64,000 nucleotides of DNA from Lepidodermella squamata (GCA_047495785.1 JBLDXI010000010.1:496001-560000), one strand, 5' to 3'; counted from the stretch's first letter, positions 12,983 through 43,748 are shown. Notes: generated by a model from the sequence alone, not told the origin. Numbers and translations: made by a program.

Positions 12983-15738
12983 ATGGCATCGAAAGTCTCA
13001 AACCGGCAATATGCTTTCAAGCTTTGTCCCGTGCTTTGGGTCCTCATCTCAATCAATTTCTTACTCATGGCTCGAGTTGAAAGCAATTTGAGCGATATCT
13101 TTGTGAAAAACTGCGATGGACCTGATATTTGCTGCGAAATCAGTCAAACTCAGCCTCTTTTCTTCCTTCTGACCCCACAACTACCAATGGACTTTCTTGC
13201 GAAGTTCATAAATGGAACCCAAGCTTTGTCCTTCAGTCCAGGATCAAAAGTCTACTCATTCGCAAGCGGCGGAGCCAACTTCAATTTTCAACTTCTTTTC
13301 GGTCGGAACATCGACTCGAAGCTAGCTGACGTTACCTTCGAAATTGCAGTTAAAAATTCAGCCTCCAGCAAACGTGCGAAAAGCTCATGCAGATTGTCTT
13401 GCCACCCTTCGATAAATCGAGTTATATGCGACGTACCGGATATCCGCGGCATTTGGCCAAAAGAGCTTACGGTGGATAAGACTACGGAACATCTCCTCGC
13501 AGTTCCATTCGATAGCCAAGGAAACTGTGGCGTCGGGTATGGCGACATTCCTGTATCTCTATGCTACGAGATAAGAATCAACGAAGATCGAGTGATTTTC
13601 CTGGCTACCGAGGCTCAACGAACTGACCTGCCCAAACTTCTGCGAGGCGTCGTTCCTCAGGAGATTATGGATAGGATTCTCAACTCTTTAAAGCCTATTA
13701 ATATCGACCAAGCGATTGTGTTTTTGCCCGACCCGATTGTTACAAGCGCGGCTAGAGTTGGCCAGAATTTGACTGTCATCAAAGGTTTGGGTCTCAGCAG
13801 CGACTCATCATTGGACACACGCTTCAACGTTCAGCTATCGGTGAGTGGGATCTCGGGGTATGTTAACTGCGACCCCTTAGATCCTCTAGACCCGGTCTAC
13901 CTTAAATACTACGAAAATCGGAACGACGCCTTTGAGGATAAGGAAATCCTCTGCATGTTCTGGGAAAAAGAGTTCAACAGCATGGCTGAACGCGGTAGAT
14001 CACTTGCATTCAACAACACTATTATCCGAATAAACGTCACTGTAACTGCTGGATTCTGGAAGGGTAATGCCACATTCCTCCACAAACTCGCCCCCTTGCC
14101 ACCCACGACTCCTTTGTCGCAAATCATTGTTCCCGCAGTTTTAGTGCCGGTTGGAACAATCGTTATCGCAATTATCATATTGACAGTTTGCCTCTGCATT
14201 CTTGCGAAGGGAACTTCGCCCGGTGTTAAAGACTTTGCGTCCAAGGTTAGGACAAAGTGCCCAATATCAAGCATGTAAGTCGAAACTACCATAATCGTTC
14301 TTTTTTAATTTTGATCTTTGTAACCTATCAGATGCCTTGGTCTTTCAAAGCCAGCCAGTGATATGCAAATGTCGCCAGTTTTTTCTCTCGACATTTTCCC
14401 GCCACATGTCGTAGCCACAATTCAAAGTCGCCGGATAAATTCTTCGGCGTTGCGAATTACTGGTGATATAGGCACTGGCCACTTCGGAAGTGTGAAGCGT
14501 GGAATTCTAACAGATCAAAGCAGTAGCCGCCGTTCGGAAAAGCCTGTCGCCGTTAAATTCATTCAAAGTAGGTTAGAAATAATTTTAGAGCTGTATGTGA
14601 CCGAGTTTTATTCCAGATTGCACTGATCAGAATCAGATGAAAGAGTTTTTCCAAGAGGCGATTCACATGTTTTCATTCGAGCACGTCAATGTTTTAGGGG
14701 CTTATGGCATTGTTTACGGTAACAACGAAGCCCCAGCTCTCGTTTTGCCCCTTATGGATGTTGGAGACCTTCGAAGATTCGTTCAAATCGCCCCGAATCA
14801 AGTCACGGATATGCTTATAGTGGATTTTGCGAAGCAAATTGCTGAAGGAATGGCGTACCTCGTAGCAAAAGGATTCGTTCATCGCGACCTAGCAGCGAGA
14901 AATTGCTTGTGAGTTATACCCATTTTATGTGGAATTAAACAAGAGTATGTAAAATCGTTCTCTGATAGGATCAACAAGCATCGAATGGTGAAAATCGCAG
15001 ATTTTGGCTTATCTCGACTGGCAACAAGCACAGACTACGACTACGTTCCAACGTATCCTGTTCAAATGCTACGTCGTCCAATGCCTATTAGGTGGATGGC
15101 ACCTGAGTGTATAGAAAACGGAATTTTTAGCGAGAAAACTGATGTCGTAAGTTTGACTCAATAAACTGCTGGACACATATCATTATATTCATCTTTCAGT
15201 GGTCTTTCGGAGTGCTGCTTTGGGAAATGGCATCAAAAGGATTGCGACCCTATACAAATCTCGAAACTCCCGTTGAAATAATTCGCCACGTTTGCGTCAC
15301 TAAACAGCTGCTACCCCAACTTCCGATGATTTCTGAAACGATGTATTCTTTGATGATCCGCTGCTGGAATCAGCAGGCCTCTTTGAGGCCAAAATTCACC
15401 GATATCGTAACAATCACCAAATTTCTTCTCAATGAACCTGACAGTCCTTTGTTCAACATTTCGGATGTACCGCGATCGGTGAGCTCAACAAACCGTGTTG
15501 CTATTATTTTATCTTATACTCTCGTTCTTTTCAGTCCGTAACAAGCGCGGAAGTGGAGGTATTCAACAACTTCCGCGATGCTCTAACTGTTGTGGCGGAG
15601 AGGGCCAACGAAACGGGCGATTCTAGCGGCAGCGCGCCGCAGCATGCGCCGATACCTAGTAGGCGAACAAGTGACGCCTCTCAGCAGGGTGTCGAGCGGT
15701 ACAGTGTAACTTCCACTGTTCAGCAACCGCCAGCATAA
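12983..15738 (+). CDS. MET/RON-like receptor tyrosine kinase 1 (2 IPT domains, TM, kinase). Exons 12983-14274, 14332-14567, 14617-14908, 14969-15146, 15200-15478, 15535-15738
   Basis: Signal peptide, SFASGG and FLPDPIV IPT motifs, TM, GTGHFG, VAVK, HRDLAARN, DFG, PIRWMAPE and DV|WSFG. All five introns are GT-AG, 49-60 nt and frame-preserving. Confidence 0.9.
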
Positions 15739-16469
15739 TTTGTGATCTAATTGATTTAGCTTTTACTTATTTTCATTGCTAAAGAAAGATAAAAGAAATA
15801 TGGCGAATTGGTCTTACTGTCTTACTAGCATGGCTAACAAAAAGAAGCAGTATTAAACGAATGCATTTGATTGATTCGGCAGGCGTCAGTGAATCCAGTG
15901 AATCATCAAATGAGCCGGTGTACACCTATGTGTAACTGTTTTGAACAATGAAAATCCTGGCACAAATTCAGAGGTTAATTAGGAAATGCTCCTTTTTCGG
16001 ATCTATTGCCTATTATAAGCTTGAAGTGTCTGCGTTCGTTGGGGGCATCGTTCTACTAAATTGCTCATTTGCTTATCATCAGGAAACTGCCGTGTCTCTT
16101 TCCTTAGCATGTAGTAAGTATACGGCAATATCAACTGTTAGAAAAATATACGTCATGAACGTCTGAGGTCGCATGCTTTCATACAGGATCAGCGTGCTGC
16201 CGCCTTACAATGTGGCAGCTTGAACGTTCTGCCACACACACCTGCGCAGAAAAAAGCATGCAATTACTATAGCTCAATGTGAAAAACTAACGAAAACAAA
16301 GGTAAAGCATCTTGGTTTAACATTCCCACTTATTATTATTGTCAAAAGGCTCAGTATTATACAGTGAAAGCAAACAAATTTCGTCTCTGACATCTCTATA
16401 TGGTGGCGTTACAACAATTTATAGGCAACAGTTAGCTCTGGCTTTGTATATCAAATCCGGGGTATTAAC

Positions 16470-19467
16470 ATGGCAATAACCACCGGATTGCCACTAATTA
16501 CCTTCATCTGCTTATCGAACTTAAATGTGATACTAACGGCCGCAAATGATCGACCGACGACGCCGAACGTCGAGTCTTTGCGCAAAAACTGGGCGTATAG
16601 GAGCGGTGGTACTGAGCTTGTAGCTGTCTTCACCCGACGCAGCGCTTTTCATCTCATCAACAATACGATGCCCGAGGTGAAGTTAGTCCTGCACTACGTG
16701 AGCGGCTCAAGTAGCTCGAACCTATTGGAAAATGCTGAAACTGGCGGCGATGGCATAGTAAACGGTACAGATGTGGATGAGTCTCTTGATGACAGTGTAG
16801 CTACGCCTCAACCTGAAACTTCCATTTCTCCTAGCACGAAAACTGAAACTGTTGAAGCACCCTGTCGGCAGCTTACCGGATTAAACCGTTTACCGGAATA
16901 CGCATGCGTTGTGCCAAATATTTCCGAATTTTTCCCGAATTTTACTGCTGCAGATAGGAACAACATCGGGAAGGTGCTACTTGCGCTGCCACTTCAGATT
17001 GATAGTTGTGATAACCCGCAAACCGCAGGACTTTGCTTCGGAATTTATGTGAACGGGCAATTAGCGGGATTACGAAAAGTTCAGCGAAAGCTCCCTAGCT
17101 CTCACGAAGCAACTATGCGGCGAAGAATGTTTTCAATAATCTACAACCCTGATCCTGTGGTTACATCCATCAGCCTCCTTCATCCCAACAATTTACTTAC
17201 AGTCTACGGATCGGGATTCGATTGGGAAAGCGATCCCATTATCTTTCAACCGGAGTTCCAGTTCTTTGCAAACATCCCGTCTCGAAATGAGTCGTTTCAG
17301 ATCTTGTGCAATGTAACCTACAAAAACTCGAACGACAACGGTGTCACATGTGTCCATGATAAGATGACCTTATTCCCGTACACTATGAGGGGAGAAAACA
17401 TTCAAATAACGGTACGAAGTTACAACTGAAATTATTTTTCGAAATTATTACTCTTCATTTCAACGGGTTACACAGATCAAAATGGGCGACTGGTCATCGA
17501 CACAGCTATTGGATGTCGAAATGAAAAAACCGCCGATGCCCCCACCCATGCCCCCACCGCCATTCATTGTTCCACCCTTCAGAGGAGAGTGGGATAGAAA
17601 TTGGGGTGACAGACCTGGCCCCGATCGCAGGGGTCCGCCAAGAGATATGGGACCTGGCCCCGATCCAAGAGGTCCGCCGAGAGACTTTGATGAAGGAAAG
17701 AGGAAGGTATGTATTTCCGGTGTAAGATGTGCTCTTTTCCTATCAATTCCTATCAATCTTCCCATAGGAATTCGAGCGAATATTCATGAACGAATCAAGA
17801 TTGTTCAAACCACCAGATATGGACCGAAATATAACATATCCACCAGAGCGGTTCGGAAAAGGACCCTCCCCCGAATACCTGGTCAAAATCATCGTCCCAA
17901 TAAGTACCGTGCTGCTGGCTGTTTTGGCGGGCATCGCACTCTTATTTTGCTTGAAGCGGACTCCGCTACGAAAGACCAAGTTTTTCCGAACAATTTTCCC
18001 ACCAAAAGCGGTTACGCACAAGTAATATTTCCGTGACACAAAGCTTCATGCATAATTTCTCGTTTTCTCCTACTACTAGATTGGATCACATCATTGAGAA
18101 AGAGATGCATAAATTTTCGCTGGAGCTTCTACCACCTGACATGCTAGAAACTCTTAAACAACACCAAATCGATAAAACAAGGTTAATGGTCAGTGGGAAC
18201 GATCTTGGCGAGGGCTTCTTTGGCATCGTCAAATCTGCAATCATGTACCCGCCGCGATCAGCTAAAGCTCCCCTTTCGGCCACGCTATCCAACCCGGAAC
18301 GTAAGGTTCCCCATCGTCGCTCTAACGAGGACAACCTACCCCAAAAAGTGGCGATTAAATCAATCCAAAGTAAGAAACTTACTAAATCCTTGTTTGTTAG
18401 CAACTCATTCGAAATGCTTTTCAGGATATGAGAACCTTGAAAGGATGAAGGAGTTCTTTGAAGAGGCTATCATAATGTTCTCGTTCAATCATATCAACGT
18501 TCTCTCTGCTATTGGATTCGTTGATGACGTCGATGGTTTCCCCGGCATAGTTTTACCTTATATGGACGGAGGAAATCTACATCAGTTCGTCAAGACAAGC
18601 GATCGTTTCGATGACGCTATGCTGTACGACTTTGCCCACCAAATCGCCAAGGGAATGACGTATCTATCTAATCTGAAACTTGTACACAGAGATTTAGCCG
18701 CTCGCAACTGCCTGTAAGTTAACATTGGTTCATTAACCTTTATATGCTGTCATCTTGTTCGCTAAAGGCTTAACAAGAAACTTATCGTAAAAGTTTCCGA
18801 TTTCGGTCTAACCCGGCACTCTCAGACCGTGAACTACGACTACGGCCTACCCCAGTACGAAGTTGTCAGCCAGCACCGCCCACTGCCCATAAGATGGCTA
18901 GCACCTGAGTGTTTGGAAACGGGGCGATTCAGTGAGAAATCTGACGTCTGGTCGTTTGGAGTCCTGCTTTGGGAATTAGCCACAAAGGGCGCCAGACCTT
19001 ACGGCGATTTCGACTCTGCTCGAGTCGTCTCGTTCGTCCGCTTCGACAACGGCCGGCTATCTAAAACTGCCGATATGTCAAGCGATCTTTACGACGTAAT
19101 GCAGCAATGCTGGCGAACTCATTCATCAGAGCGACCTTCCTTCACCGACCTTGTCGAAACCTTCCGTTTCATGTTAGAGGAAGTAGGCCACGTGGAAGAC
19201 TATTGCGATCCTGCTCTTAGCTACATCTCCGATAACGGGCGTATGGCTCTGGAGAAAACAAGCTCTTTGGACAGCCAAGTTGCCTCCCTTCGAAGTATGA
19301 GTACCAATGTCACCATGATCCCTATAATGGATACAGCTGATAGTGGGTACCTTGAGGTCATCCGGAGCGACAGTATGAGCTCGGGCAGTAATTCGTCATC
19401 TTTCAAATTGAAGCCGATACCGGTGGAATCAGGCAATAATCCAATGTTTTCTCATGAAGAGGCATAA
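16470..19467 (+). CDS. MET/RON-like receptor tyrosine kinase 2. Exons 16470-17411, 17476-17706, 17768-18021, 18080-18369, 18425-18713, 18768-19467
   Basis: Signal peptide, AYRSGG and YNPDPVV motifs, Pro-rich stalk, TM, GEGFFG, VAIK, HRDLAARN, DFG and PIRWLAPE. Introns of 54-64 nt keep the frame. Confidence 0.9.
17612..17689 (+). repeat. Two-copy 39-bp coding tandem repeat (PGPDxRGPPRD) in the RTK2 stalk
   Basis: gacctggccccgatc occurs at 17612 and 17651. Confidence 0.85.
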
Positions 19468-20339
19468 AAATTAATATCTCGTTTTTTATATATTACGGCT
19501 CTTTCGTAGTTAACTTATAGATTTTTATTTTACCGGTGAAATTGTCATTAAAATGGATGTTGAAATTTGTTGGTTTTTTTCAGAATATCTTTTCGCGGAA
19601 CTTAATTTACCTGATGCGGAGCCAAATTCGACTGTAGCGTAACCAAATTTTAGATTAGCAGAAGGTCGATTTCCGAACATTTCTATGATTTTAGAGCAAT
19701 GTAGGAATTCTATAGTGAAGAATGCGTCCATACACAGAATTTTACGCTGAATCTAGCCATGATATATTTTAAATTACACTGATCAATCATGACATTCTTG
19801 AAATTTTCGAAAAGTGGTTTTAGGCCCATTGAAAATTCCTAAATTTGGTTCCGCTGCAAAGACCCGTTTTTTTCTTGAAAAATGAACTGCCAAAAAACGA
19901 CATGGTATACCGTGACGTATAAAAATGCTGCTGTCTCCCGCGTTACGAGGTTAATTCTGTAATAAAAAAAGGAATATTCCAGGCGAAAAAACATCCACAC
20001 ATGCGCTTTATTTCATTATATTTATAACGGTTATTACACATTAAAAAGCAGTTAGGCATCGTAATAAGGCGGCTACTAGAGTAATTATAATTATTCGATA
20101 TAAATAAAATGCAGAGATAATATAAGCAAAAAAATCGAATAGTGAAGATGACGCTAAAAGAACCGGAATTTTCCTTAAGCAAAATTTGGAAATCAAACCG
20201 AAAGTCCGATTTTATCGCAAAAGCTTTGAAATTTGTGAAATTGGATTTTTTTTGTAAAAATCGAACAAAAAAGCACACGCGGGTTATAATTACTATCAAA
20301 AAATTTGCAAAAGAAGAGCGATACAAAAAAGCGAGTTTT

Positions 20340-23300: not shown

Positions 23301-25092
23301 AGAACGCGATAAAATTCAGCCTCGGCGAGTGATCCAACCGTAGAACTGGTCGAGCTGCTACTCGAATGCGGCTCCACTTTCGTAGCCCCACCGAAAAAGT
23401 GGCCAATACCAAGTTTCGACTTCTTCTTCGCCGACGCTAAATGCTCCTGGCGCCTGGCCTGGCACTCTAACAGCGCCTTCATCGTTTGCTGGATAACATT
23501 GTCCTGAACAACAAGCTGCCGTTTCAACTCCCGTTCACGCTCCTCCTGCCACGACTCCTTTTTCGCACTGCTTTTCCTCGACGTCAAATTAGGCTGTTGA
23601 TCAGTTTGAGTTTGCTCACTGATCGTCTCCTCAGATTCGTCCTCTTCATCCTCAGAGCTAGCGAAAGACAGCGAATCAATCGCATCGCCTTCATCCGCCT
23701 CGCTATTATCACCATTCCGGCGTGAATTGTTGCGATTAACCGCAGCGTGGATGTCTTCCATCGAATTCCAGGCCGAAGTTGAGTCGGTACTAACCGCGTC
23801 CGAGTAATAATTCGTCGCCCCAAACGACCGGCCTCGAGGAGGCGGCGGCGGGGCGGCGTTAATAGGCGCAACTTCATCCTCCTCCTCGTCATCTTCCTCA
23901 CTGATTTCCTGATCCTCCTGCTGGATAATCGCCTCAACTTGTTGCCTAGCTTTCGAGACCAGCTCGTTAATATCATCCTCATCCTCGTCACTCCCCGCCT
24001 CTGAGCTAGATGAATCGTAATTTTTGCTCGGCGAGGGTCGGGTTATTCCAGATCGGCTGATTCCACTAGGTGGTAATCGGTTCGTATCAGGAATTAAGGC
24101 GGCTCGAGAAACGCCCAAGGCCGGTTCAGCTCGGACAGTTAACGGGCTGAGTTGAACAGCAGCAACGCCGCTGCTTTCCATCTGAAATCCCAAGGCCTCG
24201 AGCTTGCCTTCGAAACTCAACCGCATGTCTTTGATATTCGACCCTGAGCGATTGTGACCGTAGTTTTGCTGATGGTGGAGGATGACGGTAGGTGCGGCGT
24301 GGAGAGGCGGCGGAACAGGCGGTGGGATTTCGCTTTCTGAAGTCGAAGGAGCTGTTTGATAATCCCCCGTGCTAGACGAGCTGTCGTCATTTGACGCCGG
24401 CGAGTAAGACCTGATATTAGCCGCTCTTTTCGCGATTTGAGTTGTAAGAGGAGAGCCCTAAACGTCAGAACTGTCATTACATGAATTCAAAGATATCAAG
24501 AGTACTTACGCTCCTACTTCTCCTTTTATTTGAAGATGGAGTGGACCGAGCTTGAGCTGCTTCTTCTCGACATCGCTGCTCCCACAAGGCTGCGACTTTA
24601 GATACGGGGCGACTGGCTATCGCTGCAGCAGCGCATTCATCTGGCAGTGGTTGGTTATTTGCGTGAGGCATAGCCGGTGTGTTGGCAGGTGCTCTAGGGA
24701 AGTTAGAAGCTGGCGTACCTGATCAAAAAAAGATAAAATCTGCGAAATCTTGAACAATTTAGTCTTACGATTGACTGAAGATAACACTGATTTTGATGGC
24801 ATCTGATTATTGGACTGGGGTGTTTTGGAGGGTATTCTTGGCAAAGCGCTCGCTGATTTGGGCGGCGATTGCTTCTGGCTGTTGATCATATTGGCTGCAT
24901 TTGATACAGAAATTCCGCTAGATGACTTTGACGCGGATGAGCTTGTGTCCTCTACTTCCACCTGCTGGTAGTGCTTGGCAAGTTCGGCTAACCTCTGCTT
25001 CAAGCCACTGCCATTTTCTAAAGAAAACGGATGTTTTAGTATAAACTCAGCGATCTTAAAAGCCACAAACCTTTTGTAGAAATATTATCCAT
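20340..25092 (-). CDS. ANLN: Anillin. Exons approx. 25092-25071, 25017-24769, 24718-24510, 24457-23276, 22750-22603, 22536-22328, 21224-20340
   Basis: Low-complexity N-terminus, RBD (QDNVIQQTMKAL...EAEFYRVLLVANERRK|AIHSEIKR), C2/anillin-homology segment (VTISDIQLQLK, YFIILLRHG, ISIYGL) and a C-terminal PH domain (HSGFLT, WHRRW, CARPWTLEL, FAADTK...W). Confidence 0.88.
22118..22174. repeat. Perfect 27-bp inverted repeat with a 3-nt loop, inside an anillin intron
   Basis: ttcttatccaaaacggttgattgattt-gaa-aaatcaatcaaccgttttggataagaa. Confidence 0.95.
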
Positions 25093-27099: not shown

Positions 27100-27230
27100 A
27101 GCGCTAATGGGATTAGCGGAAACTTCCTCAGCGGAAATGCCTCAGGGCGGAAAATAATTTGGCGGAAAAATCACTTTGCGGAAAATGATGCTGGCGTAAA
27201 AGTTTTAGCGGAAATGCAAAAGCGGAAAGC
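27100..27230 (+). repeat. Degenerate 14-16 bp periodic array of gcggaaa cores
   Basis: Cores at 27116, 27131, 27147, 27162, 27178, 27194 (gcgtaaa), 27208 and 27222. Confidence 0.75.
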
Positions 27231-33187: not shown

Positions 33188-34225
33188 ATGGCATTAGGCG
33201 TACTCCCAACAATGAATTCAGAAAAAATAGGAATGGCCGCGATGACGGTGCTCATCATCCTGGCCTTTCTCTTTCAAGCTGTATGCTTCGCTTTCAACAA
33301 TTGGTACCGCATGGACATCGGTCCTTTCATGATCCGCACTGGTTTGTGGGAGATGAAAATCTACGACGATCAGAACATCACTGGTCTTGACCGGCGTCAT
33401 CATGAAAAAGCCGAATTCCGTTTCTACGACGACATTTGGAAATCGGCGATGGACAAGATGGAGAAAATGGCAAAAACCGGGCCACCGAAAAAGTCGAAGA
33501 AGGGCAAGAACAAGAAAGTACTTGATGACGACGATGATGATTCCGATGGAAGCGAAATCGAACACTTCAAAGCTGGAGAAAACTGGTTCACCCTACCTCC
33601 TCCACTGCCTGGGACGATTTGGGAGGACAGTCAGTCAAATCTCAGCTCAGCCGAGGCTATGTACTCTATGTCGTGGATGGCAACTTTCATTTTGATGTGT
33701 CTTTTCGCTTTCCATCAATTCCTGCCAAATTTTAAGGTGACTATACCTATAATGAGAATATTCTGCGCTTCGCTTTTTATAGCGGGCTTCTTCACGATAA
33801 TAGCCGTAGCTTGTTATGGAAATGCGATGCCTTCCATTTGCAAGGAACTCACTGCCGCTTATGAAAATTCGCCGAACCCGAAATTTGCCGAGGCTGCACG
33901 CATATCATCTGACTGCTCATTCAGCGGCGGATATTCGATGTCAATATTCTCAGGTATTTTCCTCATGGCAACCGGCGTCATGGCTGCTATTCGCATTCGT
34001 CAGGTTCAGCTGGGCGAGAGCTTTGACATTACTACTGCCGCTGGTACTGCCGTCAACTTTGGCAAATCATTACTAGGCGGCGCAGCTGGCCGTAGCGCCC
34101 CTCCAGCCGGAGCCCAAGGTAACTTTGATTGGAATCAACCACCCCCAGGTGCTGCTTTCTCAGCTGGCTACGACCAGGGCAACTACCAAGCCACCGGAAA
34201 CCAAAGCTGGGAACGTCTTGAGTAG
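33188..34225 (+). CDS. Claudin/PMP22-superfamily-like tetraspan membrane protein, intronless
   Basis: Four hydrophobic segments, a W...GLW motif after TM1, GYS at the start of TM4 and a Gly/Pro/Gln-rich tail. A TATA-like tatataa lies near 33075. Confidence 0.7.
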   Translation: MALGVLPTMNSEKIGMAAMTVLIILAFLFQAVCFAFNNWYRMDIGPFMIRTGLWEMKIYDDQNITGLDRRHHEKAEFRFYDDIWKSAMDKMEKMAKTGPPKKSKKGKNKKVLDDDDDDSDGSEIEHFKAGENWFTLPPPLPGTIWEDSQSNLSSAEAMYSMSWMATFILMCLFAFHQFLPNFKVTIPIMRIFCASLFIAGFFTIIAVACYGNAMPSICKELTAAYENSPNPKFAEAARISSDCSFSGGYSMSIFSGIFLMATGVMAAIRIRQVQLGESFDITTAAGTAVNFGKSLLGGAAGRSAPPAGAQGNFDWNQPPPGAAFSAGYDQGNYQATGNQSWERLE

Positions 34226-34431
34226 TAACCTCAAAAATAGGGCTCTGTTCTTCAACTTCTTCAGCCCCGATTCACATTCTTTTCTGTTGACGTCCGTACC
34301 CGGAATGATCTATAATTAGCTTGTCGATCTCTGGTTATTTCTTCGATTCTAGCGTCTCATGTTGCACAGATTCTCATTTTTTGCTTTGTTAATTTTTGTG
34401 ATGTAGTAGCCAATATTAAATGGAATAAATA

Positions 34432-35422
34432 TCAAATTCTAAGTCTTGTGTTCTCACAAAGCGCGTGAACACCCGAGGCAATAATTGTCATTAGACGGAG
34501 AGATAGCATGCGTTCGCCAGCATTTCGCAGCAACTCAAGGACAACCACGTTAGGCACCTTGAATGGGAGCACCTGCATCCAGTTCCCGTTGCGAATGAAT
34601 ATTTCAGTTTGCGTTAAATCTTTGAAAGACCCATCGCTCCTATTAAACCGGCAGTACAAAGAGTCATCAACTATTTCTGTTGTTGAGTTGTATGCATCGA
34701 CAATCAAATGGCAAGGCGAATCATTGCCGATTGTTACGTTGTAGCTTTGAACCATAGGATTTCCTCCGAAAGTAAGCCCTCGGCCCTAGAGAGTAGATTT
34801 TAGCTTGATATCTTTAGCGCTCATTATTAAGTCTTACATTGATTTGAAGGATATCTGACCCAATCGATTGAACTCCAGTTACACTAGGATCCGGAAAGTA
34901 GATCATGGACAGTGACCGCACCAAAGCCAAGCGGGATTCAGACGACAAATTGACATGCCTCGCATGAGCAAATTCGATCGGTTGATCTTCGTAGTAAAGT
35001 AAGTAGCAGAATCTTGATTGCAAAGGCACAAATTCACAGCCACCAAATTTTCCTAGCGGTTCAACGAAAATAGAGCTATTCGAAACATCTTCACCAAATC
35101 TTGGCCGTATTTCAGAAATATTTAGCGACTTGCAGTTTATTGATGATGGCTCAGTGTCGCAGGGTTGTGTCACCTTCTTATCAGAACCAGCGGGCGAGGT
35201 GTTAAAGTTGAAAGCATCGAAGTAGAATAGGTGGAAAACTGCTGGTTTGACCGGACCTTCCAACGGTTCCAATAACAGGAACTTGAAATCGTTACCCCCA
35301 CTTTTTAGGGACCATCTGTATGACGCACTAATTATACTCGGTCTAAGTGCTGTTCCAGAGCATAAAAAATGTAGCAAAATAGAAGCTACGCGGAAGATTG
35401 ACGGGCCTGAGAAAAGATGCAT
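34432..35422 (-). CDS. Kinase-less MET-like IPT3-IPT4 ectodomain protein, copy A (intact). Exons 35422-34838 and 34785-34432
   Basis: Signal peptide, WSLKSGG, VEPLGKFGGC, YFPDPSV and ILQIN|GRGL across the 52-nt phase-0 intron. Ends in a weakly hydrophobic tail with no kinase. Confidence 0.8.
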
Positions 35423-36345
35423 TTCTACCTTGGACCGAATACATGGCTAGGAAAGCGGTTACTTTGTTTATCAGCGTAACACAGAAAGCAAACAACGGTT
35501 GCCTACGCACTTACTGGCATTAAAAACGAAGGTGGGTTATCTAAATATAGCGGAATTTTCGGGCTGTGCATTGAAATCTGAGCTAGAAACTACACGAGTG
35601 CTATCAAACCTTGAGTTCGACACCTAATAACAACACGCAGCAGATTAAGTATGAAGATCCTGATAGAATTATGCCGCAGCATCAATTTTATTACTCATTT
35701 ATAATATTAGATGAATTTGTTGTGCTTAATTTCGGACTTTGAGCTTTGAGCTTCAGTAACTGGTAACTTGCGTGTTTTCATGTTCTCTCGCTCCTGAGGC
35801 CATGATGTATGACGTCATAAAGAATGATGCTGGTTCCTCTTTGCCGTCAGCTTGAGTGTTTTTTTCTGTGTGAGTCATTCTCAAACTACAGCACGAGACG
35901 ATAATTTTTTAAACGTGCTCAACAAACAGGCTTCTTAGGTGTAACAACACCTTACCTTGCGACGACTACGGCGGTAGAACCAACATCGACATCATCAAAC
36001 CGAGAGCCACTCGGCCACGACTTTATTCTTTTTCCACAAAATCACACAGTTTAACCGTGACGATTGATACAAAACAACGAAAATTTAAATACTGCCACGA
36101 TTGAACAAGCACATCAACACCTTTTTTTCTGTCAAACAGTTTTCATCTTTTTCTAAGAAAAATTAATGAATTTGGCGGTAAATATTCGCGTCATGCTTTG
36201 CTCATGATGTGATTATGAACACGAAAACAACGTAAATAGTATTTAAAACACGGGAAAGAGATGCACTGACACAGTTTAAAAAATATGACAGCATAATATG
36301 CGAGCATTTTTCACAGGCGACAAAACAAGTCCCCGTAAATCGGGC

Positions 36346-36591
36346 TCACCTGTCGATCGATTGATTATTGTTGTTAGAATCTCGCTGGGCGTGAATATTT
36401 ATAACTTGATAGCCGTTACTTTTGCTATCACTAAATGGGCTAGGGGAGGCTAATGATATATCATCATCTGTTGTCCTTATTGGAGTTAATGTGTGCGATT
36501 GATAGTTGAGATGGCCTTTAGTCGGTTTGAACCGCCTAATGCTGCCAGCAAGAGCACTGAAGTCGCTGTAGTTGGAAGAGATTGAGGACGT
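36346..36591 (-). pseudogene. Duplicated 3' fragment of the RTK3 last exon (possible new terminal exon of copy B)
   Basis: Exact copy of 38389-38634. Confidence 0.75.
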
Positions 36592-36615
36592 CCAGCGATC
36601 GAAATTTATACAAAC

Positions 36616-37465
36616 TCACGTGTGCATATTCCATAAAAATAAAATGCTGGCTACGCCAGCACACATGAAAGACCCATCGCTCCTATTAAACCGGCAGTAC
36701 AAAGAGTCATCAACTATTTCTGTTGTTGAGTTGTATGCATCGACAATCAAATGGCAAGGCGAATCATTGCCGATTGTTACGTTGTAGCTTTGAACCATAG
36801 GATTTCCTCCGAAAGTAAGCCCTCGGCCCTAGAGAGTAGATTTTAGCTTGATATCTTTAGCGCTCATTATTAAGTCTTACATTGATTTGAAGGATATCTG
36901 ACCCAATCGATTGAACTCCAGTTACACTAGGATCCGGAAAGTAGATCATGGACAGTGACCGCACCAAAGCCAAGCGGGATTCAGACGACAAATTGACATG
37001 CCTCGCATGAGCAAATTCGATCGGTTGATCTTCGTAGTAAAGTAAGTAGCAGAATCTTGATTGCAAAGGCACAAATTCACAGCCACCAAATTTTCCTAGC
37101 GGTTCAACGAAAATAGAGCTATTCGAAACATCTTCACCAAATCTTGGCCGTATTTCAGAAATATTTAGCGACTTGCAGTTTATTGATGATGGCTCAGTGT
37201 CGCAGGGTTGTGTCACCTTCTTATCAGAACCAGCGGGCGAGGTGTTAAAGTTGAAAGCATCGAAGTAGAATAGGTGGAAAACTGCTGGTTTGACCGGACC
37301 TTCCAACGGTTCCAATAACAGGAACTTGAAATCGTTACCCCCACTTTTTAGGGACCATCTGTATGACGCACTAATTATACTCGGTCTAAGTGCTGTTCCA
37401 GAGCATAAAAAATGTAGCAAAATAGAAGCTACGCGGAAGATTGACGGGCCTGAGAAAAGATGCAT
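36616..37465 (-). CDS. Kinase-less IPT ectodomain protein, copy B (new C-terminus). Exons 37465-36881 and 36828-36616; possible splice 36619-36566 extends it to 36346
   Basis: Identical to copy A up to DGSF, then reads into the insert (MCAGVASILFLWNMHT*). Confidence 0.6.
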
Positions 37466-38388
37466 TTCTACCTTGGACCGAATACATGGCTAGGAAAGCG
37501 GTTACTTTGTTTATCAGCGTAACACAGAAAGCAAACAACGGTTGCCTACGCACTTACTGGCATTAAAAACGAAGGTGGGTTATCTAAATATAGCGGAATT
37601 TTCGGGCTGTGCATTGAAATCTGAGCTAGAAACTACACGAGTGCTATCAAACCTTGAGTTCGACACCTAATAACAACACGCAGCAGATTAAGTATGAAGA
37701 TCCTGATAGAATTATGCCGCAGCATCAATTTTATTACTCATTTATAATATTAGATGAATTTGTTGTGCTTAATTTCGGACTTTGAGCTTTGAGCTTCAGT
37801 AACTGGTAACTTGCGTGTTTTCATGTTCTCTCGCTCCTGAGGCCATGATGTATGACGTCATAAAGAATGATGCTGGTTCCTCTTTGCCGTCAGCTTGAGT
37901 GTTTTTTTCTGTGTGAGTCATTCTCAAACTACAGCACGAGACGATAATTTTTTAAACGTGCTCAACAAACAGGCTTCTTAGGTGTAACAACACCTTACCT
38001 TGCGACGACTACGGCGGTAGAACCAACATCGACATCATCAAACCGAGAGCCACTCGGCCACGACTTTATTCTTTTTCCACAAAATCACACAGTTTAACCG
38101 TGACGATTGATACAAAACAACGAAAATTTAAATACTGCCACGATTGAACAAGCACATCAACACCTTTTTTTCTGTCAAACAGTTTTCATCTTTTTCTAAG
38201 AAAAATTAATGAATTTGGCGGTAAATATTCGCGTCATGCTTTGCTCATGATGTGATTATGAACACGAAAACAACGTAAATAGTATTTAAAACACGGGAAA
38301 GAGATGCACTGACACAGTTTAAAAAATATGACAGCATAATATGCGAGCATTTTTCACAGGCGACAAAACAAGTCCCCGTAAATCGGGC

Positions 38389-41300
38389 TCACCTGTCGAT
38401 CGATTGATTATTGTTGTTAGAATCTCGCTGGGCGTGAATATTTATAACTTGATAGCCGTTACTTTTGCTATCACTAAATGGGCTAGGGGAGGCTAATGAT
38501 ATATCATCATCTGTTGTCCTTATTGGAGTTAATGTGTGCGATTGATAGTTGAGATGGCCTTTAGTCGGTTTGAACCGCCTAATGCTGCCAGCAAGAGCAC
38601 TGAAGTCGCTGTAGTTGGAAGAGATTGAGGACGTAGCCGAGTCAACCGACGGGCTCGACTTTACCGGGTTGGGGGTGCTGCCATTGTTGAAACTGTGGGA
38701 GAACCAGGAGTTTCTGGAGTAAGAAAATCCGGGCGTTGAACCCATTCCACTGATTGCTGAGTCGGGTGGGGTGGGCGTACCAGGTCGAGACGTAGCAATG
38801 AAAACGCTGTCAATATCTCCCGATCCATGGCCTTTTTCACTGGAAGTCAAGCGGTTATATTTCCTGAAAAATGAATCGGCTGAAACTGAGATGAAATTCA
38901 ATCATCAGAAAACTTACGATAAAACAGGGGATTTCGATATTGTGTCATAAGCTGTCTGGCTGCCGTTATTGGGGCTAGCAGTAGCCGATGCTACCCCTGA
39001 ATCCGTAGTAGCATAGCCGGCTGACGAAAATTGCGTGTTATTGGAAACAGGGGAGCTCGCCTCATTGGAATGATCGATGTCATAACCATCGACAGATGTG
39101 TTCTCGTCAGAATCTTCATCGCCGTCTTCTTTAGCTACGTTGATAGTCGTCTCGCCACTCAGAGCGAGTAGGGAGTCTTCGAAATTCAAATTCAACTGCT
39201 CGTCAAGAGGCTCGCGATATTCCCAACGATTCTATAAAACCGTAATGGTTAAGCTGAAATTTGTGACTTGAGTAAATTCCTACCTCAGGGCTGGTCCAAA
39301 GTGGGCTTTTTGGGTCATTCAGTAGATTTTCGGTCAACGTGACCAGTTCAGCAAAAGTTGATCTCGCTGATGAGTGCTCGTTCCAACAAGACATCATCAG
39401 TTCATAGAGACAATCGGAAATAATTGGCAACTTGGGCAAACGCTGCTTATCGTCACAGATGTGGCGTTTCAGGTAGGATGCCTCAATAGCAGGATACGGC
39501 CTCGCCCCTCGCGTTGTTAATTCCCACAGAACAACACCATAAGCCCACTAAAAAGTTCAATTGAAAAACTTGCGAAGAACAAATAGTTTATAGGAACATA
39601 CCACATCCGATTTTTCGGAGAAAGTGCCAAGGGCCAAACTTTCTGGGGCCATCCATCTAACTGGAAGTGGTCTGCCGTGGTTTTTAATCAAATAGCTCGG
39701 AATTTCGTAAATTGCGTCAGTCTCCTCGCAACGTCTGGACAGACCGAAATCAGCCACCTTGACGATGCGTTGTTTATTTAACCTAGAGCAATAATTTGGC
39801 CTAATTTTGAGAACAATTTTTCATCAGGGATAAACTTACAGGCAATTACGGGCGGCCAAGTCTCGATGGATAATCTTTTTGTCTGCCAAGTACTGCATGC
39901 CCTTAGCTATCTGCCGAGCGAAATCGACAAGAAGAGGATCGCTGATTTGATTCGAAGCCGTCTGCACGAACTTTCTCAAATCTCCAGCATCCATCATCGG
40001 CAATACAACACCAGGATAACCATCAATGCTCGTAACGCCATGAGCGCCAAGTACGTTCGGATGGTCGAAAGAGAACATCAGCACAGCTTCGCTGAAAAAT
40101 TCTCTCAGCTGATCGACGTCGGAATACTTCTGAATAAATTTGACAGCAATGTCTTCGCCAGGTGCCTTGAGAGAGTCAGCTGAATCACCGCTAGCAGTAC
40201 GCTTGAGTTCCTTAGCGTTGAGTAATTTTCCGCTACGAACAATACCGAAAAATCCATTGCCAAGCTCGTGGCCCTGACGAACCAAGGCGGAATCGATTTG
40301 ATGCTGTTTAACGACTTCTGCCAAATCCGGTGGAAGTAGCCGCATCAACTGGTCGAAATCATCAGGTTCCATTGTCTTAGCATCCTTGGCATGAAGCGAC
40401 TTCATCCATTTTCCAAATGGTCCAGGTATGGTATTGCCCAATTTTTCCGACGCCTTGATAGCAGCCGGCGAATAGCTGTATCGCAAACAGCAGACGGCTA
40501 TGCAACCAGCGGCGATTGCAATTGAAACAACGCAGACAGGGATTACTATCGCTACGATAATTCCAACCGGAGTTCCGTGATCCGCGGTAACAGGAGCTGG
40601 CGGCGGTCTTGGTGTTCCGTTGCCAAGCGGGTACATTTCTGAGGTGTTGTATACCCAGTTGCCATGGTGGATTGCTACGTCAACACTGATTTCGGGCAAA
40701 TATCTCAGATGTTCGACGCCGTAGATTTGTTCAAGGGTGTCAATCAATCGAGCATCGTCAAAGTCGCAAATCAGTTGCGTATTCGTAATTTGGGGCTCGG
40801 GTGCTTTAGCGGTCACATTTTCGTTAGTATTTTTGACAGTTGTAGTGGTCGCAGTAGACAGGGGTGTACATCTTGTTTGACCGCCAAGAAGGGATATATT
40901 GTACGACCTCATAATTACAACATAGTCTGGATTGAAGCCGTTACCCTAAAAATAAATGAAATAAGAAAGGTCCGATGGAAGATTTTAGTGACTCACGGTA
41001 ATTTTGACTCTTCTTCTAGATATGAAGGTCACATTTGAGACCACTGGGTCCGGGAAGTAAACGAATGACATCGTTTGCCGCAGCATACCAAGTGCCTCAT
41101 TCGGGAATTGGGATCCTCCAAACGCCCCAAAATAGCCGATCGTAGAGCCATCTCCGGTTAGTGTGAAGCACAGACGCTTTTTGCCGGCCGAATATTTGCA
41201 ACCTCCAAATTCTTGCAACGGCTCGACACTTAGGGTGCTATTTGTGTTATCGGCATTGAAATCAGGGTAAAGGCCAGAAATGTCCGGGAAAGGGCAAAAT

Positions 41301-41608
41301 ATGTGCATGCCATTAACTCGGCATGCTTCCGTCAAGTTGAGATCAGGGATTTTCCCAGAGTTATTTTCTCCAAAATAATGGATGATGAATCTCGTTGTGT
41401 TGTAGGGTAGTGACTGACCGCCTGGGTTAAGCAGTAAAACGTCCAACTCGGCACCGCCGCTTCTGAAGGAGTATTTGACCGGGAAATTGAGGATTCCGGG
41501 AGGGGCAGGTCGTGGGTTCAACAGGGCCGCGAATGGGTTGGCTGCAGGGGTAATAATTTGGGCCGCAAGGGACGAAAACAGCGAGCAGATGATCACAATA
41601 GATAGCAT
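38389..41608 (-). CDS. MET/RON-like receptor tyrosine kinase 3. Exons 41608-40997, 40945-39840, 39782-39602, 39547-39284, 39231-38918, 38863-38389
   Basis: Signal peptide, YSFRSGG, VEPLQEFGGC, YFPDPVV, TM, GNGFFG, IAVK, HRDLAARN, DFG, PVRWMAPE and a long Ser/Tyr-rich tail. Introns of 51-57 nt keep the frame. Confidence 0.9.
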
Positions 41609-42670
41609 TTTATAGACTTCAATTAATTCTTAATGTAATTATTTTACAATCCATATTAGCAATGGATCAAGTTCAAGAGTCTTCTAAAAGAAAAAATTGA
41701 ATACGTCACTAAATGAAGCGGATGTTTCCGTAAGTTTCCGTAAGGCAGACCAGTTTCATGATAAACGCAGCAACAAGGGAAAGGAACTGAAAAAAGTTGA
41801 ATAATTCACCTTTACGTGGGTTATAATGACAATGCTGGCAGTATAGACCTGTGCATGTGTGTATGTGTCTTTTCGCAAGCCTACGTAAATCTCATATAAT
41901 AATAATAACAGTTTCACTTTTCCCGCTATTACATAATAAGCCTGCGAAATTGGTCGTGAACGCAGCTTGGTTTAATATTAATAAACGCGCAACAAAGCTC
42001 TTTTTCTACGACAAATGCCTACACGTTTGACACAGAACAAACTGCATCATACGCCTGCTTGGTTCGCTTGTTTTTTTCTCTCTTGTTTGTGCTCACGTCG
42101 ACGAGCTACAGGCAGGTATTTACCGTGTGCGCAAGTGCCGTAGCGCGGGCAAAAAATGTATAAGAAAACATCTATAGACGTAAAAAACGCACCGTGCCAT
42201 GCAGTTTCTCTAATATTACGTGTTACGAAGCTTGGCATTGTCTTCTGGCAAGCTTACGAACGCCTCAGCCATGAAAACGTGAACGGAATCTCAAGATACA
42301 GAAGGGCCCTGGAACAAATCCGCTTGCGGAGGCGTTCAACGCTATTTGTCGGTAAACAACGTTGCGTAGTTTCCGGTGTAATTAAGATCCGGTAATTACC
42401 CGATTAAAGCGCTCAATTTTCGGCCCAGTACCAGACGCACATTTTCAGATGCAACCTTATGATTCATAACTTCGATATCAAAAAAATAGGATGTAATATT
42501 ATTCAAATTTTTTCATTCTTTTGAATTGTTTTAGTTTGACGACTTCGCGTCATAGATTAGAGTATGGCGAAAATGAGCCGCCTTTAAAGCCAGCAAAGGA
42601 CATACATAAAATACCACCGGAGAACGTTGATTTTGGCAACAATCAATAACATTTCGATACGTAAAAGCCT

Positions 42671-43748
42671 CTAATAAATTGTTCTGAATAATGAATGCTT
42701 CAAGCTGCCTTCTCTTCTGCCAGCCGACGATTGAGCACCAGGAGGAACTGCATCGTTGAGCTGAGCCTTCACCGCTGCCGCAGGGGCTGCAGTTAGTTCT
42801 GTTGACGCCATTACAACTGGAACAGTAGTGGCGAAATTGCCAACAGTAATTTTTGCGGATAAACCACTGCTTGTCGCACTGAGATTGACGGAAGACGGAA
42901 AATCACTGGGTTGAAGAGCGCACGACAGCATATCGGGCTTTATGTCATCGAATATGACCTTGCACGGCGCTTCGACATTATTGGGGAACACCAATGTGAC
43001 TAAGAAGAGTCGAGACATTTTCACAGGATTTTCGCCTGTAATTTGAGCACCCTATTAGCATCAATTGAATGGTTCAACATTTCTAGGAGGGAATATTAGC
43101 ACTTACGGAAATATTAAGGAGACTTTTTTGAATGTTAAGCTGAGCGCCTGTGAAGCTAGGATCTGGTGAGTATCTAATTGATTGTGCTTTGCGGACAAAC
43201 GGCTCGGCCATTGCACTGGTCGATGGCGGAAAATTGACTGAAAGTTGGCCCGGCTGAACTGCGAAGGAATAGCATAGTCGCGGAACATTAATCCTTCGAC
43301 TTGCTGGTGGCAGAGGTTGACAGCCATTGAGTTGTCCCCTCGGCTCGACCATCATCGTTGTGAAATTTGGTGATGAGAAAATTGTTGACATTGGAATGTT
43401 TTCATCCGCCAAAATTTTAGCCACGTTCGGCGCTTTACAATCCACGCGGATTTCGTTGCTCAAAGGCGACGGCCGACATGGCTGCGTGATAGTTTTTGTA
43501 GGCTCTGTCGACGATCCGCTGCTGTAGTAGTAGAGATTAAACTCCACGGTCACGTTTCGACAAGACGCAGGAATAGTAGGTGCCATGAGGAAAAGCACTT
43601 GAAAATCTGTTCCGCCACTCAGAAATGCCCAGTGGTCAGGCAGGTTCATGATAGTAGGAAATCCAGCACATGGCGACGCAGCCGGTAAAGGATCTGACAG
43701 GACTAGTCTGGCAATGAATAGCACGAGTCCAATTTTTTGTAATGTCAT
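42671..43748 (-). CDS. Kinase-less, apparently secreted MET-like IPT3-IPT4 protein (paralog C). Exons 43748-43107 and 43051-42671
   Basis: Signal peptide, WAFLSGG, VEPRGQLNGC, LCYSF, YSPDPSF and LLNIS|GAQI across the shared phase-0 intron. No TM or kinase. Confidence 0.8.

What the first reader, a model, noticed from the sequence alone, without database searches (positions are those of the whole stretch)
12983..43748. Diversified family of Sema-less MET/RON-like receptors with paired kinase-less decoys
Seen: six genes share one compact ectodomain, namely three full RTKs (12983+, 16470+, 41608-) and three kinase-less forms (35422-, 37465-, 43748-). Shared motifs are [YW][SA][FYL]xSGG, C..C..[PL][DN][IV], an inserted P-x(5-6)-C...[LF]C[YF] cysteine pair, [YF]xPDPx[VF], then xG.G and a second Cys pair, but otherwise the ectodomains are very divergent. 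Known (recalled): this pattern fits MET IPT3-IPT4 (KSFISGG...IYVHNPVF...LEIKG), and the kinases carry MET-type features (EFFxEAxxMFSFxHxNVL, VLPxMxxGxL). Canonical MET/RON also have Sema, PSI and IPT1-2 domains, which are absent here because the IPT region starts shortly after the signal peptide. Inference: a lineage-specific receptor/decoy system with fast-evolving ligand faces on conserved active kinases, a pattern typical of immune, allorecognition or environmental sensing.
Basis: partly seen in the sequence, partly recalled or inferred. Interest (0 to 1): 0.82.

Follow-up and report, generated by a model that had tools for sequence, protein, structure and literature searches.

The report
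Short MET-like receptors with secreted twins

Summary
Six genes share one ectodomain, and pairwise phmmer links them (C-D 1e-19, D-F 1e-12, B-C 1e-9, A-C 3e-4).

- **Receptors:** A, B and C are full receptor tyrosine kinases (RTKs) with every catalytic motif.
- **Secreted forms:** F and D have a signal peptide and both ectodomain domains, but no membrane helix and no kinase.
- **The third "decoy":** E is a 100%-identical, truncated tandem copy of the 5' part of D, not a third form.
- **RNA evidence:** RNA contigs confirm all five introns of C and the one intron of F. F's mRNA starts with a spliced leader 5 nt before its ATG and ends about 90 nt after its stop. It is not spliced to C and has no upstream Sema exon.
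- **Fold:** AlphaFold models of domain 1 (pLDDT 83 for C) match IPT/TIG domains almost exclusively (plexin A4 Z 8.7, MET IPT2 Z 7.1). No Pfam TIG hit.
- **MET link:** A profile comparison aligns the domain 1/2 boundary with MET IPT3/IPT4 (E 2.8e-4; control 0.026). The kinases hit MET best in the PDB, but the trees leave MET versus AXL-group placement unresolved.
- **Range:** Among 1.84 billion protein representatives there are four relatives, all from metagenomes. Two are secreted F-types, one with conserved synteny.
- **Selection:** Listed variants in C are 31 synonymous to 3 nonsynonymous, so immune-style diversification is not supported.

The decoy role is inferred.

The parts
12983..15738 (+). 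Gene A, a receptor tyrosine kinase of about 826 aa. Exon 1 (12983-14274) encodes the signal peptide, a Cys-rich N-terminal extension, IPT-like domains 1 and 2 and the membrane helix. The predicted kinase exons are 14332-14567, 14617-14908, 14969-15146, 15200-15478 and 15535-15738.
   Evidence: ORFs. GT..AG introns of 49-60 nt keep the frame through to the stop. Kinase Pfam hit. MET is the best PDB hit. The AlphaFold model of the ectodomain has pLDDT 67.8. Orthologue P0001/L001. I had no RNA check for this gene.
16470..19467 (+). Gene B, a receptor tyrosine kinase of about 901 aa. Predicted exons are 16470-17411 (signal peptide, domain 1 with a long Ser/Asp-rich insert, domain 2), 17476-17706 (Pro-rich stalk), 17768-18021 (membrane helix), 18080-18369, 18425-18713 and 18768-19467.
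   Evidence: ORFs. Frame-keeping introns. Kinase Pfam hit. C-lobe PDB hits RON 85.5, ABL 85, MET 83 bits. No RNA check.
38038..41608 (-). Gene C, a receptor tyrosine kinase of 983 aa. Exons are 41608-40997, 40945-39840, 39782-39602, 39547-39284, 39231-38918 and 38863-38392 (stop at 38391-38389). The poly(A) site is near 38038. It has a signal peptide, domains 1 and 2, a membrane helix at about aa 335-358, a kinase and a 260-aa Ser-rich tail.
   Evidence: RNA contigs of runs X1 and X3 skip all five introns and end in poly(A). The intron ends are refined to GT..AG and the frame stays open to aa 983. MET is the best PDB hit at 91 bits. The domain 1 model has pLDDT 83.
42581..43754 (-). Gene F, a secreted kinase-less paralogue of 340 aa. 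Exons are 43748-43107 and 43051-42674 (stop at 42673-42671). It has a signal peptide and domains 1 and 2, but no membrane helix. A spliced leader is joined at the TAG acceptor 5 nt before the ATG.
   Evidence: RNA contigs span the 55-nt intron, and coverage stops at about 42581. No RNA covers 41800-42400, between F and C. Non-genomic 25-nt leader at 43754. Orthologue P0003 has the same two-exon, TM-less layout and the same divergent ankyrin neighbour.
34432..35422 (-). Gene D, a predicted secreted kinase-less paralogue of about 312 aa. Exons are 35422-34838 and 34785-34435. Its closest relative in the window is C's ectodomain.
   Evidence: ORFs. 52-nt GT..AG intron in frame. phmmer C-D 1e-19. 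No membrane helix. A convergent gene on the + strand ends at 34225, so there is no room for kinase exons. TAG acceptor 2 nt before the ATG. No RNA check.
36616..37465 (-). Gene E, a truncated exact duplicate of the 5' part of D. Exon 1 is 37465-36881. Exon 2 starts at 36828, leaves the duplicated block at 36666 inside domain 2, and stops at 36618-36616 after 16 unrelated residues.
   Evidence: Identical 202-aa ORF. Duplication limits.
34623..38634 (.). Tandem duplication. The 1,969-bp blocks 34623-36591 and 36666-38634 are 100% identical and are joined by a 74-nt filler (36592-36665). Each block holds the last 244 nt of C's coding sequence with its 3'UTR, the spacer, and the first two thirds of D.
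   Evidence: A DNA contig of run X2 reads from the block's end into the filler (loose end at 38634). However, its depth (111) is not double that of the flanks (95).

Best explanation
This is a lineage-restricted family of single-pass receptor tyrosine kinases. It is probably gastrotrich-specific, though I did not check the organism myself.

**Architecture (shown).** The whole ectodomain is two IPT/TIG-type beta-sandwich domains. Domain 1 is enlarged by two disulfide-bearing loops and a helix. A membrane helix, a MET-type juxtamembrane segment and a catalytically complete kinase of the MET/TAM neighbourhood follow.

**Origin (inferred, about 55%).** The family most likely descends from a MET-type receptor that lost Sema, PSI and IPT1-2 and kept the membrane-proximal IPT3-IPT4.

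**Secreted forms (shown).** Separate genes (F, D) encode the same two domains behind a signal peptide, without a membrane anchor or kinase.

**Mechanism (inferred, not tested).**
- A ligand, or homotypic IPT-IPT contact, brings two receptor ectodomains together and triggers trans-phosphorylation of the two to three activation-loop tyrosines.
- The soluble paralogues compete for the same ligand, or form dead-end heterodimers with receptor ectodomains. Either way they damp signalling, as gene-encoded decoy receptors do.

E is a very young, truncated by-product of a local duplication and is probably not functional.
For: - **Family and motifs:**
- **Gene structure and independence of transcripts:** RNA-confirmed introns of C and F; F's spliced-leader 5' end and its own 3' end.
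- **No TM or kinase in F and D:**
- **Conservation of the secreted type:** no kinase anywhere on the 9.8-kb and 10.1-kb loci that hold the secreted relatives P0002 and P0003. P0003 is F's orthologue (phmmer 1.6e-26, same exon layout, same divergent ankyrin neighbour).
- **IPT fold:** C domain 1 model at pLDDT 83; the top 17 VIA rows are all IPT/TIG (plexin A4 Z 8.7 with rmsd 2.6 over 98 aa; NFAT 8.3; CAMTA1 TIG 7.8; MET 656-740 Z 7.1 at 20% identity). Nearly all of the Foldseek top 50 are IPT/TIG. The independent model of A gives the same class, and its two domains align to plexin A1 IPT tandems.
- **Link to MET IPT3-4:** hhalign E 2.8e-4 over 68 columns, in register at the domain boundary and at both domain 2 cysteines, against 0.026 for the IPT1-2 control.
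- **Kinase:** MET is the best PDB hit for A and C, including the juxtamembrane segment. The best named database hits are "hepatocyte growth factor receptor-like". Placing the family with the MET-like clade is slightly better than the free tree (AU p 0.52).
- **Selection:** purifying in C, 31 synonymous to 3 nonsynonymous.
Against: - No Pfam TIG, Sema or PSI hit at E<=10.
- The domain 2 profile finds nothing in the PDB.
- hhalign probability is only 41%.
- The trees do not resolve MET against TAM (AU p 0.50 for TAM). The reference set holds only MET-like, TAM-like and Tec kinases.
- MET's YY activation-loop pair and its docking motif are absent.
- No ligand is known, and no binding or antagonism was tested.
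- The A ectodomain model is only middling (pLDDT 67.8).
Confidence: 0.6

Rival explanations
1. The secreted two-IPT proteins are not antagonists. They are the ligands or obligatory co-receptors of the membrane receptors: soluble F or D binds a receptor ectodomain through IPT-IPT contacts and promotes, rather than blocks, dimerisation.
For: The top structural matches include IPT/TIG domains that serve as dimerisation modules in solved structures (NF-kB/RelB dimerisation domains, BCAP DBB). The F type is old and conserved, as a dedicated ligand would be. No other candidate ligand gene is apparent in the cluster.
Against: Nothing distinguishes this from the decoy model in the sequence. The precedents I know for separate genes that encode ectodomain-only paralogues of receptors are inhibitors (general knowledge).
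Confidence: 0.25
2. The kinase-less copies are decaying fragments of duplicated receptor genes (pseudogenes) with no function of their own.
For: E is exactly that: a 100%-identical partial copy cut inside domain 2. D's closest relative is the neighbouring receptor C. D ends in a 40-aa tail with no counterpart in the other family members. D's expression was not checked.
Against: F is transcribed, spliced and trans-spliced. It keeps its signal peptide, all six cysteines and an open frame. It has an orthologue with the same layout and neighbour in a species so distant that the neighbouring ankyrin protein is only 34% identical, plus a second secreted relative, P0002. D has an intact frame, intron and TAG acceptor.
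Confidence: 0.1
3. The ectodomain is not a remnant of MET. A MET/TAM-type kinase cassette was shuffled onto an unrelated pair of Ig-like domains, as seems to have happened many times in this genome. On this reading the IPT resemblance is only a shared fold.
For: Earlier notes of this scan, which I did not check, report the same kind of kinase on Venus-flytrap, GH65, perforin-P2 and pseudoprotease ectodomains in this genome. Sequence evidence for MET IPT homology is weak: hhalign probability 41%, no Pfam hit. The kinase clade is not resolved as MET.
Against: IPT is the fold that sits next to the membrane in MET. The alignment is in register at the IPT3/IPT4 boundary and is 100-fold better than the IPT1-2 control. 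Among the structural matches, the highest sequence identities are to plexin A1 (24%), MET IPT2 (20-21%) and EBF3 TIG (20%). Other invertebrates have Sema-less MET-like kinases with TIG-only ectodomains.
Confidence: 0.3
4. One reading: a fast-diversifying receptor/decoy system for immune, allorecognition or environmental sensing, with positive selection on the ligand faces.
For: The paralogues' ectodomains are only 21-33% identical while their kinases are 55-59% identical. The genes are clustered, and one local duplication is very recent.
Against: Listed variants between the window and the other haplotype or strain are 14 synonymous to 3 conservative nonsynonymous in C's ectodomain. Orthologues of A and F persist in a distant species, so this is not rapid birth and death. 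The family is small here. Ectodomains evolving faster than kinases is, as far as I know, normal for receptors (not tested here).
Confidence: 0.1

Closest known systems
MET/RON receptor tyrosine kinases (Sema-PSI-IPT1-4-TM-kinase), including the spiralian MET and Met-LP receptors described in PMC6374515
   Same: Best-matching kinase N-lobe and juxtamembrane segment. IPT-fold domains lie directly outside the membrane. The domain boundary and the domain 2 cysteines align with MET IPT3/IPT4.
   Different: No Sema, no PSI, and only two IPTs. Domain 1 carries about 55 extra residues with two extra Cys pairs. There is no YY in the activation loop and no Y[VI]x[VI] docking site. The kinase forms a separate long-branched clade whose sister group is unresolved. 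No Pfam TIG hit.
Uncharacterised 'hepatocyte growth factor receptor-like' predictions with TIG-only ectodomains in other invertebrates (Amphiura P0017, Ptychodera P0066 and P0015, Watersipora P0027, Tropilaelaps P0008, Bulinus P0019)
   Same: A MET-like kinase behind an ectodomain that has IPT/TIG domains but no detectable Sema. Bulinus P0019, at 733 aa, is similarly short.
   Different: Their TIG domains are recognised by Pfam, and they usually have three or more plus PSI or LDLa. There is no detectable sequence similarity to this family's ectodomain. Some may be incomplete gene models. No secreted paralogues are known for them.
Gene-encoded secreted decoy receptors, for example Drosophila Secreted decoy of InR (Sdr), IL-22BP and osteoprotegerin (recalled from general knowledge, not checked here)
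   Same: A separate gene encodes only the ligand-binding ectodomain of a signalling receptor, with a signal peptide and no anchor. That is the layout of F and D.
   Different: For those, binding and antagonism are shown experimentally. Here they are inferred. The domains and receptors are unrelated.
Plexin IPT domains
   Same: Best structural match for domain 1 (plexin A4 Z 8.7, plexin A1 at 24% identity). Best tandem match for domains 1 and 2 (plexin A1 IPT3-6, 150 aa, Z 6.7). The only, marginal, PDB sequence hit of the family profile is plexin A1 at E 0.69.
   Different: Plexins have a Sema head and a GAP cytoplasmic domain, not a kinase.

Membership tests
MET/RON RTK family | N-terminal Sema beta-propeller | tested here: not met
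   No Pfam Sema hit on any ectodomain exon. The IPT-like domain starts 20-80 aa after the signal peptide. F's mRNA 5' end is fixed by a spliced leader 5 nt before the ATG, and no RNA lies upstream of C.
MET/RON RTK family | [quoted passage not shown] | tested here: not met
   Only two beta-sandwich domains lie between the signal peptide and the membrane helix. No PSI hit.
MET/RON RTK family | Kinase domain groups inside the MET/RON clade | tested here: inconclusive
   MET is the best PDB hit by 13-25 bits over the TAM kinase AXL. The segment trees give a separate clade (SH-aLRT 98-99) in a polytomy. AU tests reject neither MET-like (p 0.52) nor TAM (p 0.50) placement.
MET/RON RTK family | Twin activation-loop tyrosines (YY) and a C-terminal Y[VI]x[VI] multidocking site (features recalled from general knowledge) | tested here: not met
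   The activation loops read DYDYVPTY, NYDYGLPQY and DAIYEIPSY. There is no YY and no Y[VI]x[VI] in the kinase or tail exons.
IPT/TIG domain (E-set Ig-like fold) | Seven-strand IPT/TIG beta-sandwich fold | tested here: met
   Domain 1 of C (pLDDT 83): the top 17 VIA rows are all IPT/TIG, Z 6.2-8.7, rmsd 2.2-6.0 (15 of the 17 at 3.0 or below). Foldseek agrees. The model of A gives the same class, and its two domains align on plexin IPT tandems. Domain 2 rests on the A model only (pLDDT about 80-86 in that part).
IPT/TIG domain (E-set Ig-like fold) | Match to the Pfam TIG profile (PF01833) or relatives | tested here: not met
   No TIG-family hit at E<=10 for any of nine family members. The profile-profile match to MET IPT3-4 is weak but in register (E 2.8e-4, probability 41%).
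Active receptor tyrosine kinase | Signal peptide, one membrane helix, and intact GxGxxG, VAxK, HRDLAARN, DFG and APE motifs | tested here: met
   Read directly from the exon translations of A, B and C. Pfam PK_Tyr_Ser-Thr hits at 1e-24 to 1e-34.
Gene-encoded secreted decoy receptor | Separate transcript encoding only the receptor-type ectodomain, with a signal peptide and no anchor | tested here: met
   F: own spliced-leader 5' end, own 3' end, 340 aa without a hydrophobic stretch. D: predicted likewise. Relatives P0002 and P0003 sit on loci with no kinase.
Gene-encoded secreted decoy receptor | Binds the receptor's ligand, or the receptor, and lowers signalling | not testable with these tools
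   No ligand is known. This needs binding and signalling assays.

The most novel reading that the evidence does not exclude
Two-IPT kinases with conserved, gene-encoded soluble partners form a self-contained signalling module: the secreted IPT proteins are themselves the ligands or regulators of their receptor paralogues through homotypic IPT contacts. It would have arisen by truncation of MET and become private to one small phylum. That would make it a new receptor-ligand logic built from a single domain type.
Probability: 0.15. Interest if true: 0.75.

Novelty: new variant of a known kind. Interest (0 to 1): 0.5.

Why it matters
- **MET evolution.** It shows that a MET-type receptor can be stripped down to its two membrane-proximal IPT domains and still be kept, duplicated and expressed. 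The one survey of MET evolution that I read (PMC6374515) was seeded on the Sema domain, so it could not see such forms.
- **A testable question.** Human MET's IPT3-4 region has been proposed as a ligand-binding site (recalled, not checked here). A natural receptor that consists only of this region would make it possible to test whether IPT domains alone can sense a ligand and drive activation.
- **A second example of a rare design.** I can recall only a handful of conserved secreted paralogues that are gene-encoded soluble counterparts of a tyrosine-kinase receptor.
- **Limits.** The interest is restrained by three things: the family is small, ligands and phenotypes are unknown, and this genome seems to hold many other reshuffled receptor kinases.

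Tried and rejected
- **Pfam:** run on all ectodomain exons and on nine family members at E<=10. No TIG, Sema or PSI hit.
- **Word-index protein search:** A's exon 1 found nothing. The family alignment found only P0003.
- **ESM Atlas:** feature search on C's domain 1 gave only sub-threshold, unrelated rows. Atlas fold search on model A gave generic bacterial Ig-like rows with TM<0.4.
- **PDB profile searches:** the domain 1 profile gave plexin A1 at E 0.69 only. The domain 2 profile gave nothing.
- **hhalign:** the family against single TIG-bearing ectodomains of Amphiura and Bulinus was not significant. Domain 1 against domain 2 matched only the overlapping residues, so there is no evidence of an internal duplication.
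- **JGI metagenome scans:** C exon 1 and P0003 found no relatives.
- **Literature:** searching for the spliced-leader 3' end found no paper. No paper covered gastrotrich tyrosine kinases or Sema-less MET-like receptors.
- **Earlier findings by sequence:** blank.
- **Rejected reading: one long F-C transcript.** RNA coverage is zero for about 600 nt between them, and each gene has its own ends.
- **Rejected reading: membrane or GPI anchoring of F and D.** Neither has a hydrophobic C-terminal stretch.
- Searches, folds and trees used single exons by reference. Joining was done only inside local scripts, to check that the frames stay open.

Full report
**What is there.** The window is animal DNA with introns of 49-64 nt. 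Earlier agents of this scan take the genome for the gastrotrich Lepidodermella squamata; I did not test that.

An HMM built from them finds these six ORFs in the 64 kb and nothing else. Pairwise phmmer, with Z set to 20,000, links them in a chain: C-D 1e-19, D-F 1e-12, B-C 1e-9, A-C 3e-4. The family is therefore real and very divergent, at 21-33% identity.

**Gene models.** Two public runs (X1, X3) proved to be RNA. Their contigs skip introns and end in poly(A).

| Gene | Strand | Protein | Evidence |
|---|---|---|---|
| C | - | 983 aa; TM at about aa 335-358, kinase, Ser-rich tail | All five GT..AG introns confirmed; poly(A) near 38038 |
| F | - | 340 aa; no hydrophobic stretch | 55-nt intron confirmed; RNA coverage 42581-43754 |
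| A | + | about 826 aa | Predicted; frame-keeping GT..AG introns at positions shared with C |
| B | + | about 901 aa | Predicted, as for A |
| D | - | about 312 aa; ends without a membrane helix | Predicted; 207 nt from a convergent gene |

- For F, no RNA covers 41800-42400, the stretch between F and C.
- A 25-nt non-genomic leader is joined to F at the TAG acceptor 5 nt before the ATG.
- F is therefore an independent mRNA for a secreted protein. It is neither spliced to the kinase gene downstream nor preceded by further exons.
- A, D and E also have TAG acceptors 2-5 nt before their ATGs.
- I had one read-laying run, so A, B, D and E have no RNA check.
Everything was done exon by exon by reference, and joins were made only in local scripts to check frames.

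**The third "decoy".** A 1,969-bp block (34623-36591) is repeated with 100% identity at 36666-38634, with a 74-nt filler between the copies. The block holds the 3' end of C, the spacer, and the first two thirds of D.

E is therefore a copy of D cut inside domain 2, followed by 16 unrelated codons and a stop. A DNA contig of run X2 reads from the block into the filler, so the junction exists outside this assembly. Its depth (111 against 95) is not doubled, however. The duplication may be polymorphic, and I could not settle this.

**The fold.** Pfam finds nothing in the ectodomains, even at E<=10.

- *Model of A's whole ectodomain* (nine-sequence alignment): pLDDT 67.8, two beta-sandwiches.
- *Model of C's domain 1:* pLDDT 83, pTM 0.78.
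- *C's domain 1, exhaustive VIA search:* the top 17 rows are all IPT/TIG domains. Examples are plexin A4 (Z 8.7, rmsd 2.6, 98 aa), NFAT and NF-kB C-terminal Rel domains (7.6-8.3), CAMTA1 TIG (7.8), plexin A2 IPT2 (7.8), MET 656-740 (7.1, 20% identity), plexin A1 (6.8, 24% identity) and EBF1 TIG (6.5).
- *Foldseek:* gives the same class, at weak E-values of 4e-3 and above.
- *The A model:* gives the same families, and its two domains align together on plexin A1 IPT tandems and on MET 560-729.

Domain 1 is thus an IPT domain enlarged by about 55 residues (two Cys-pair loops and a helix). Domain 2 is an Ig-like or IPT-like sandwich supported by one model only.

At sequence level, the family profile against a profile of vertebrate MET/RON IPT3-IPT4 gives E 2.8e-4 over 68 columns. 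The alignment is in register at the IPT3/IPT4 boundary and at both IPT4 cysteines. The IPT1-IPT2 control gives 0.026 over 15 columns.

**The kinase.** A, B and C carry every catalytic motif.

| Query | MET | RON | AXL | Others |
|---|---|---|---|---|
| C, juxtamembrane plus N-lobe | 91 bits | 77 | 66 | Eph 64 |
| A, 91 aa | 71 | 58 | 57 | about 50 |
| B, C-lobe | 83 | 85.5 | – | ABL 85 |

B's C-lobe does not discriminate between families. In the large protein collection the best named hits are "hepatocyte growth factor receptor-like" proteins of invertebrates, followed by TAM receptors.

I built trees separately on the N-lobe and C-lobe exon segments. Both put the window kinases, together with a metagenomic relative (N-lobe tree only), in one clade (SH-aLRT 98-99) on a long stem. 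The clade sits in a polytomy with a MET-like clade and a TAM clade. AU tests reject neither partner (MET-like p 0.52, TAM p 0.50, vertebrate MET/RON alone p 0.37).

The reference set held only MET-like, TAM-like and Tec kinases, so the wider placement rests on the PDB ranking. MET's YY pair and its Y[VI]x[VI] docking motif are absent. The fair description is "MET/TAM-neighbourhood kinase, nearest to MET". Membership of the MET family is not shown.

**Distribution.** A profile search of 1.84 billion representatives gave four true relatives, all from three ENA metagenome assemblies.

- P0001 is A's orthologue (9e-76), with kinase exons on its contig.
- P0004 is a second A-like receptor.
- P0003 is F's orthologue (1.6e-26). 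It has the same two-exon, TM-less layout and the same divergently transcribed ankyrin gene next to it (34% identical, 3e-44).
- P0002 is a second F-like secreted form.
- Neither locus that holds P0002 or P0003 contains a kinase.

The receptor type and the secreted type are therefore both old within this lineage and were kept side by side.

**Selection.** Between A and its orthologue the ectodomain is 38% identical and the kinase exons 54-80%. Of the 34 coding variants listed between the window and the other haplotype or strain in C, 31 are synonymous. The three replacements (L92M, I103V, E307D) are conservative and lie in the ectodomain. None of the 17 variants beyond the ectodomain changes the protein.

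Only the best-supported variants were listed (64 were hidden), so this is a sample. It points to purifying selection and gives no hint of diversifying selection.

**Interpretation.** Shown:

- a private family of short receptor kinases with a two-IPT ectodomain;
- separately transcribed, conserved, secreted ectodomain-only paralogues.

Inferred:

- descent from a MET-type receptor by loss of Sema-PSI-IPT1-2 (about 55%), against a shuffled kinase cassette (about 30%);
- a regulatory role for the soluble forms, either as decoys (preferred) or as ligands or co-receptors.

The immune or allorecognition reading is not supported.

**Novelty.** I found no paper on Sema-less MET-like receptors or on gastrotrich kinases. 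The MET survey PMC6374515 was seeded on Sema.

The idea is not unique to this animal, though. Public annotations of a brittle star, an acorn worm, a bryozoan, a mite and a snail contain MET-like kinases with TIG-only ectodomains. They have no detectable sequence relation to this family.

Earlier notes of this scan report several other reshuffled receptor kinases in the same genome. None concerns this family.

Noticed in passing
window 43753-43779 (minus strand), 5' end of gene F: An RNA contig carries 25 non-genomic letters (mRNA sense CATCTGCGAATTTGATTTGTGTCTA) joined at a TAG acceptor 5 nt before the ATG. This is a spliced leader. It is absent from the window, and its 3' end appears in no paper searched. 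A, D and E have TAG acceptors 2-5 nt before their ATGs.
   Followed up: partly
window 34623-38634: A 1,969-bp, 100%-identical tandem duplication with a 74-nt filler (36592-36665). It also copies the last 244 coding nt and the 3'UTR of receptor gene C in behind the truncated gene E. The junction is seen in an independent DNA run, but the depth there is not doubled, so it may be polymorphic.
   Followed up: partly
proteins P0017, P0066, P0015, P0027, P0008, P0019 (public annotations): MET-like kinases with IPT/TIG-only ectodomains and no Sema occur in the annotations of a brittle star, an acorn worm, a bryozoan, a mite and a snail. This looks like an unstudied class that the Sema-seeded MET survey (PMC6374515) would have missed. 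Some may be partial gene models.
   Followed up: partly
window 44656-45462, 47035-48087, 48802-49722 (+): Three ankyrin-repeat genes lie in a row next to F. The first is conserved as F's divergent neighbour in a distant relative (L003 5968-6954, 34% identity).
   Followed up: partly
window 33188-34225 (+): A 345-aa multi-pass membrane protein with an acidic Asp-rich loop and no Pfam hit, convergent with gene D.
   Followed up: no
window 38001-38600: RNA word depth in run X1 is about twice that of the rest of gene C, and this stretch lies inside the duplicated block. The cause could be 3' bias, or transcripts from the second copy behind E.
   Followed up: no
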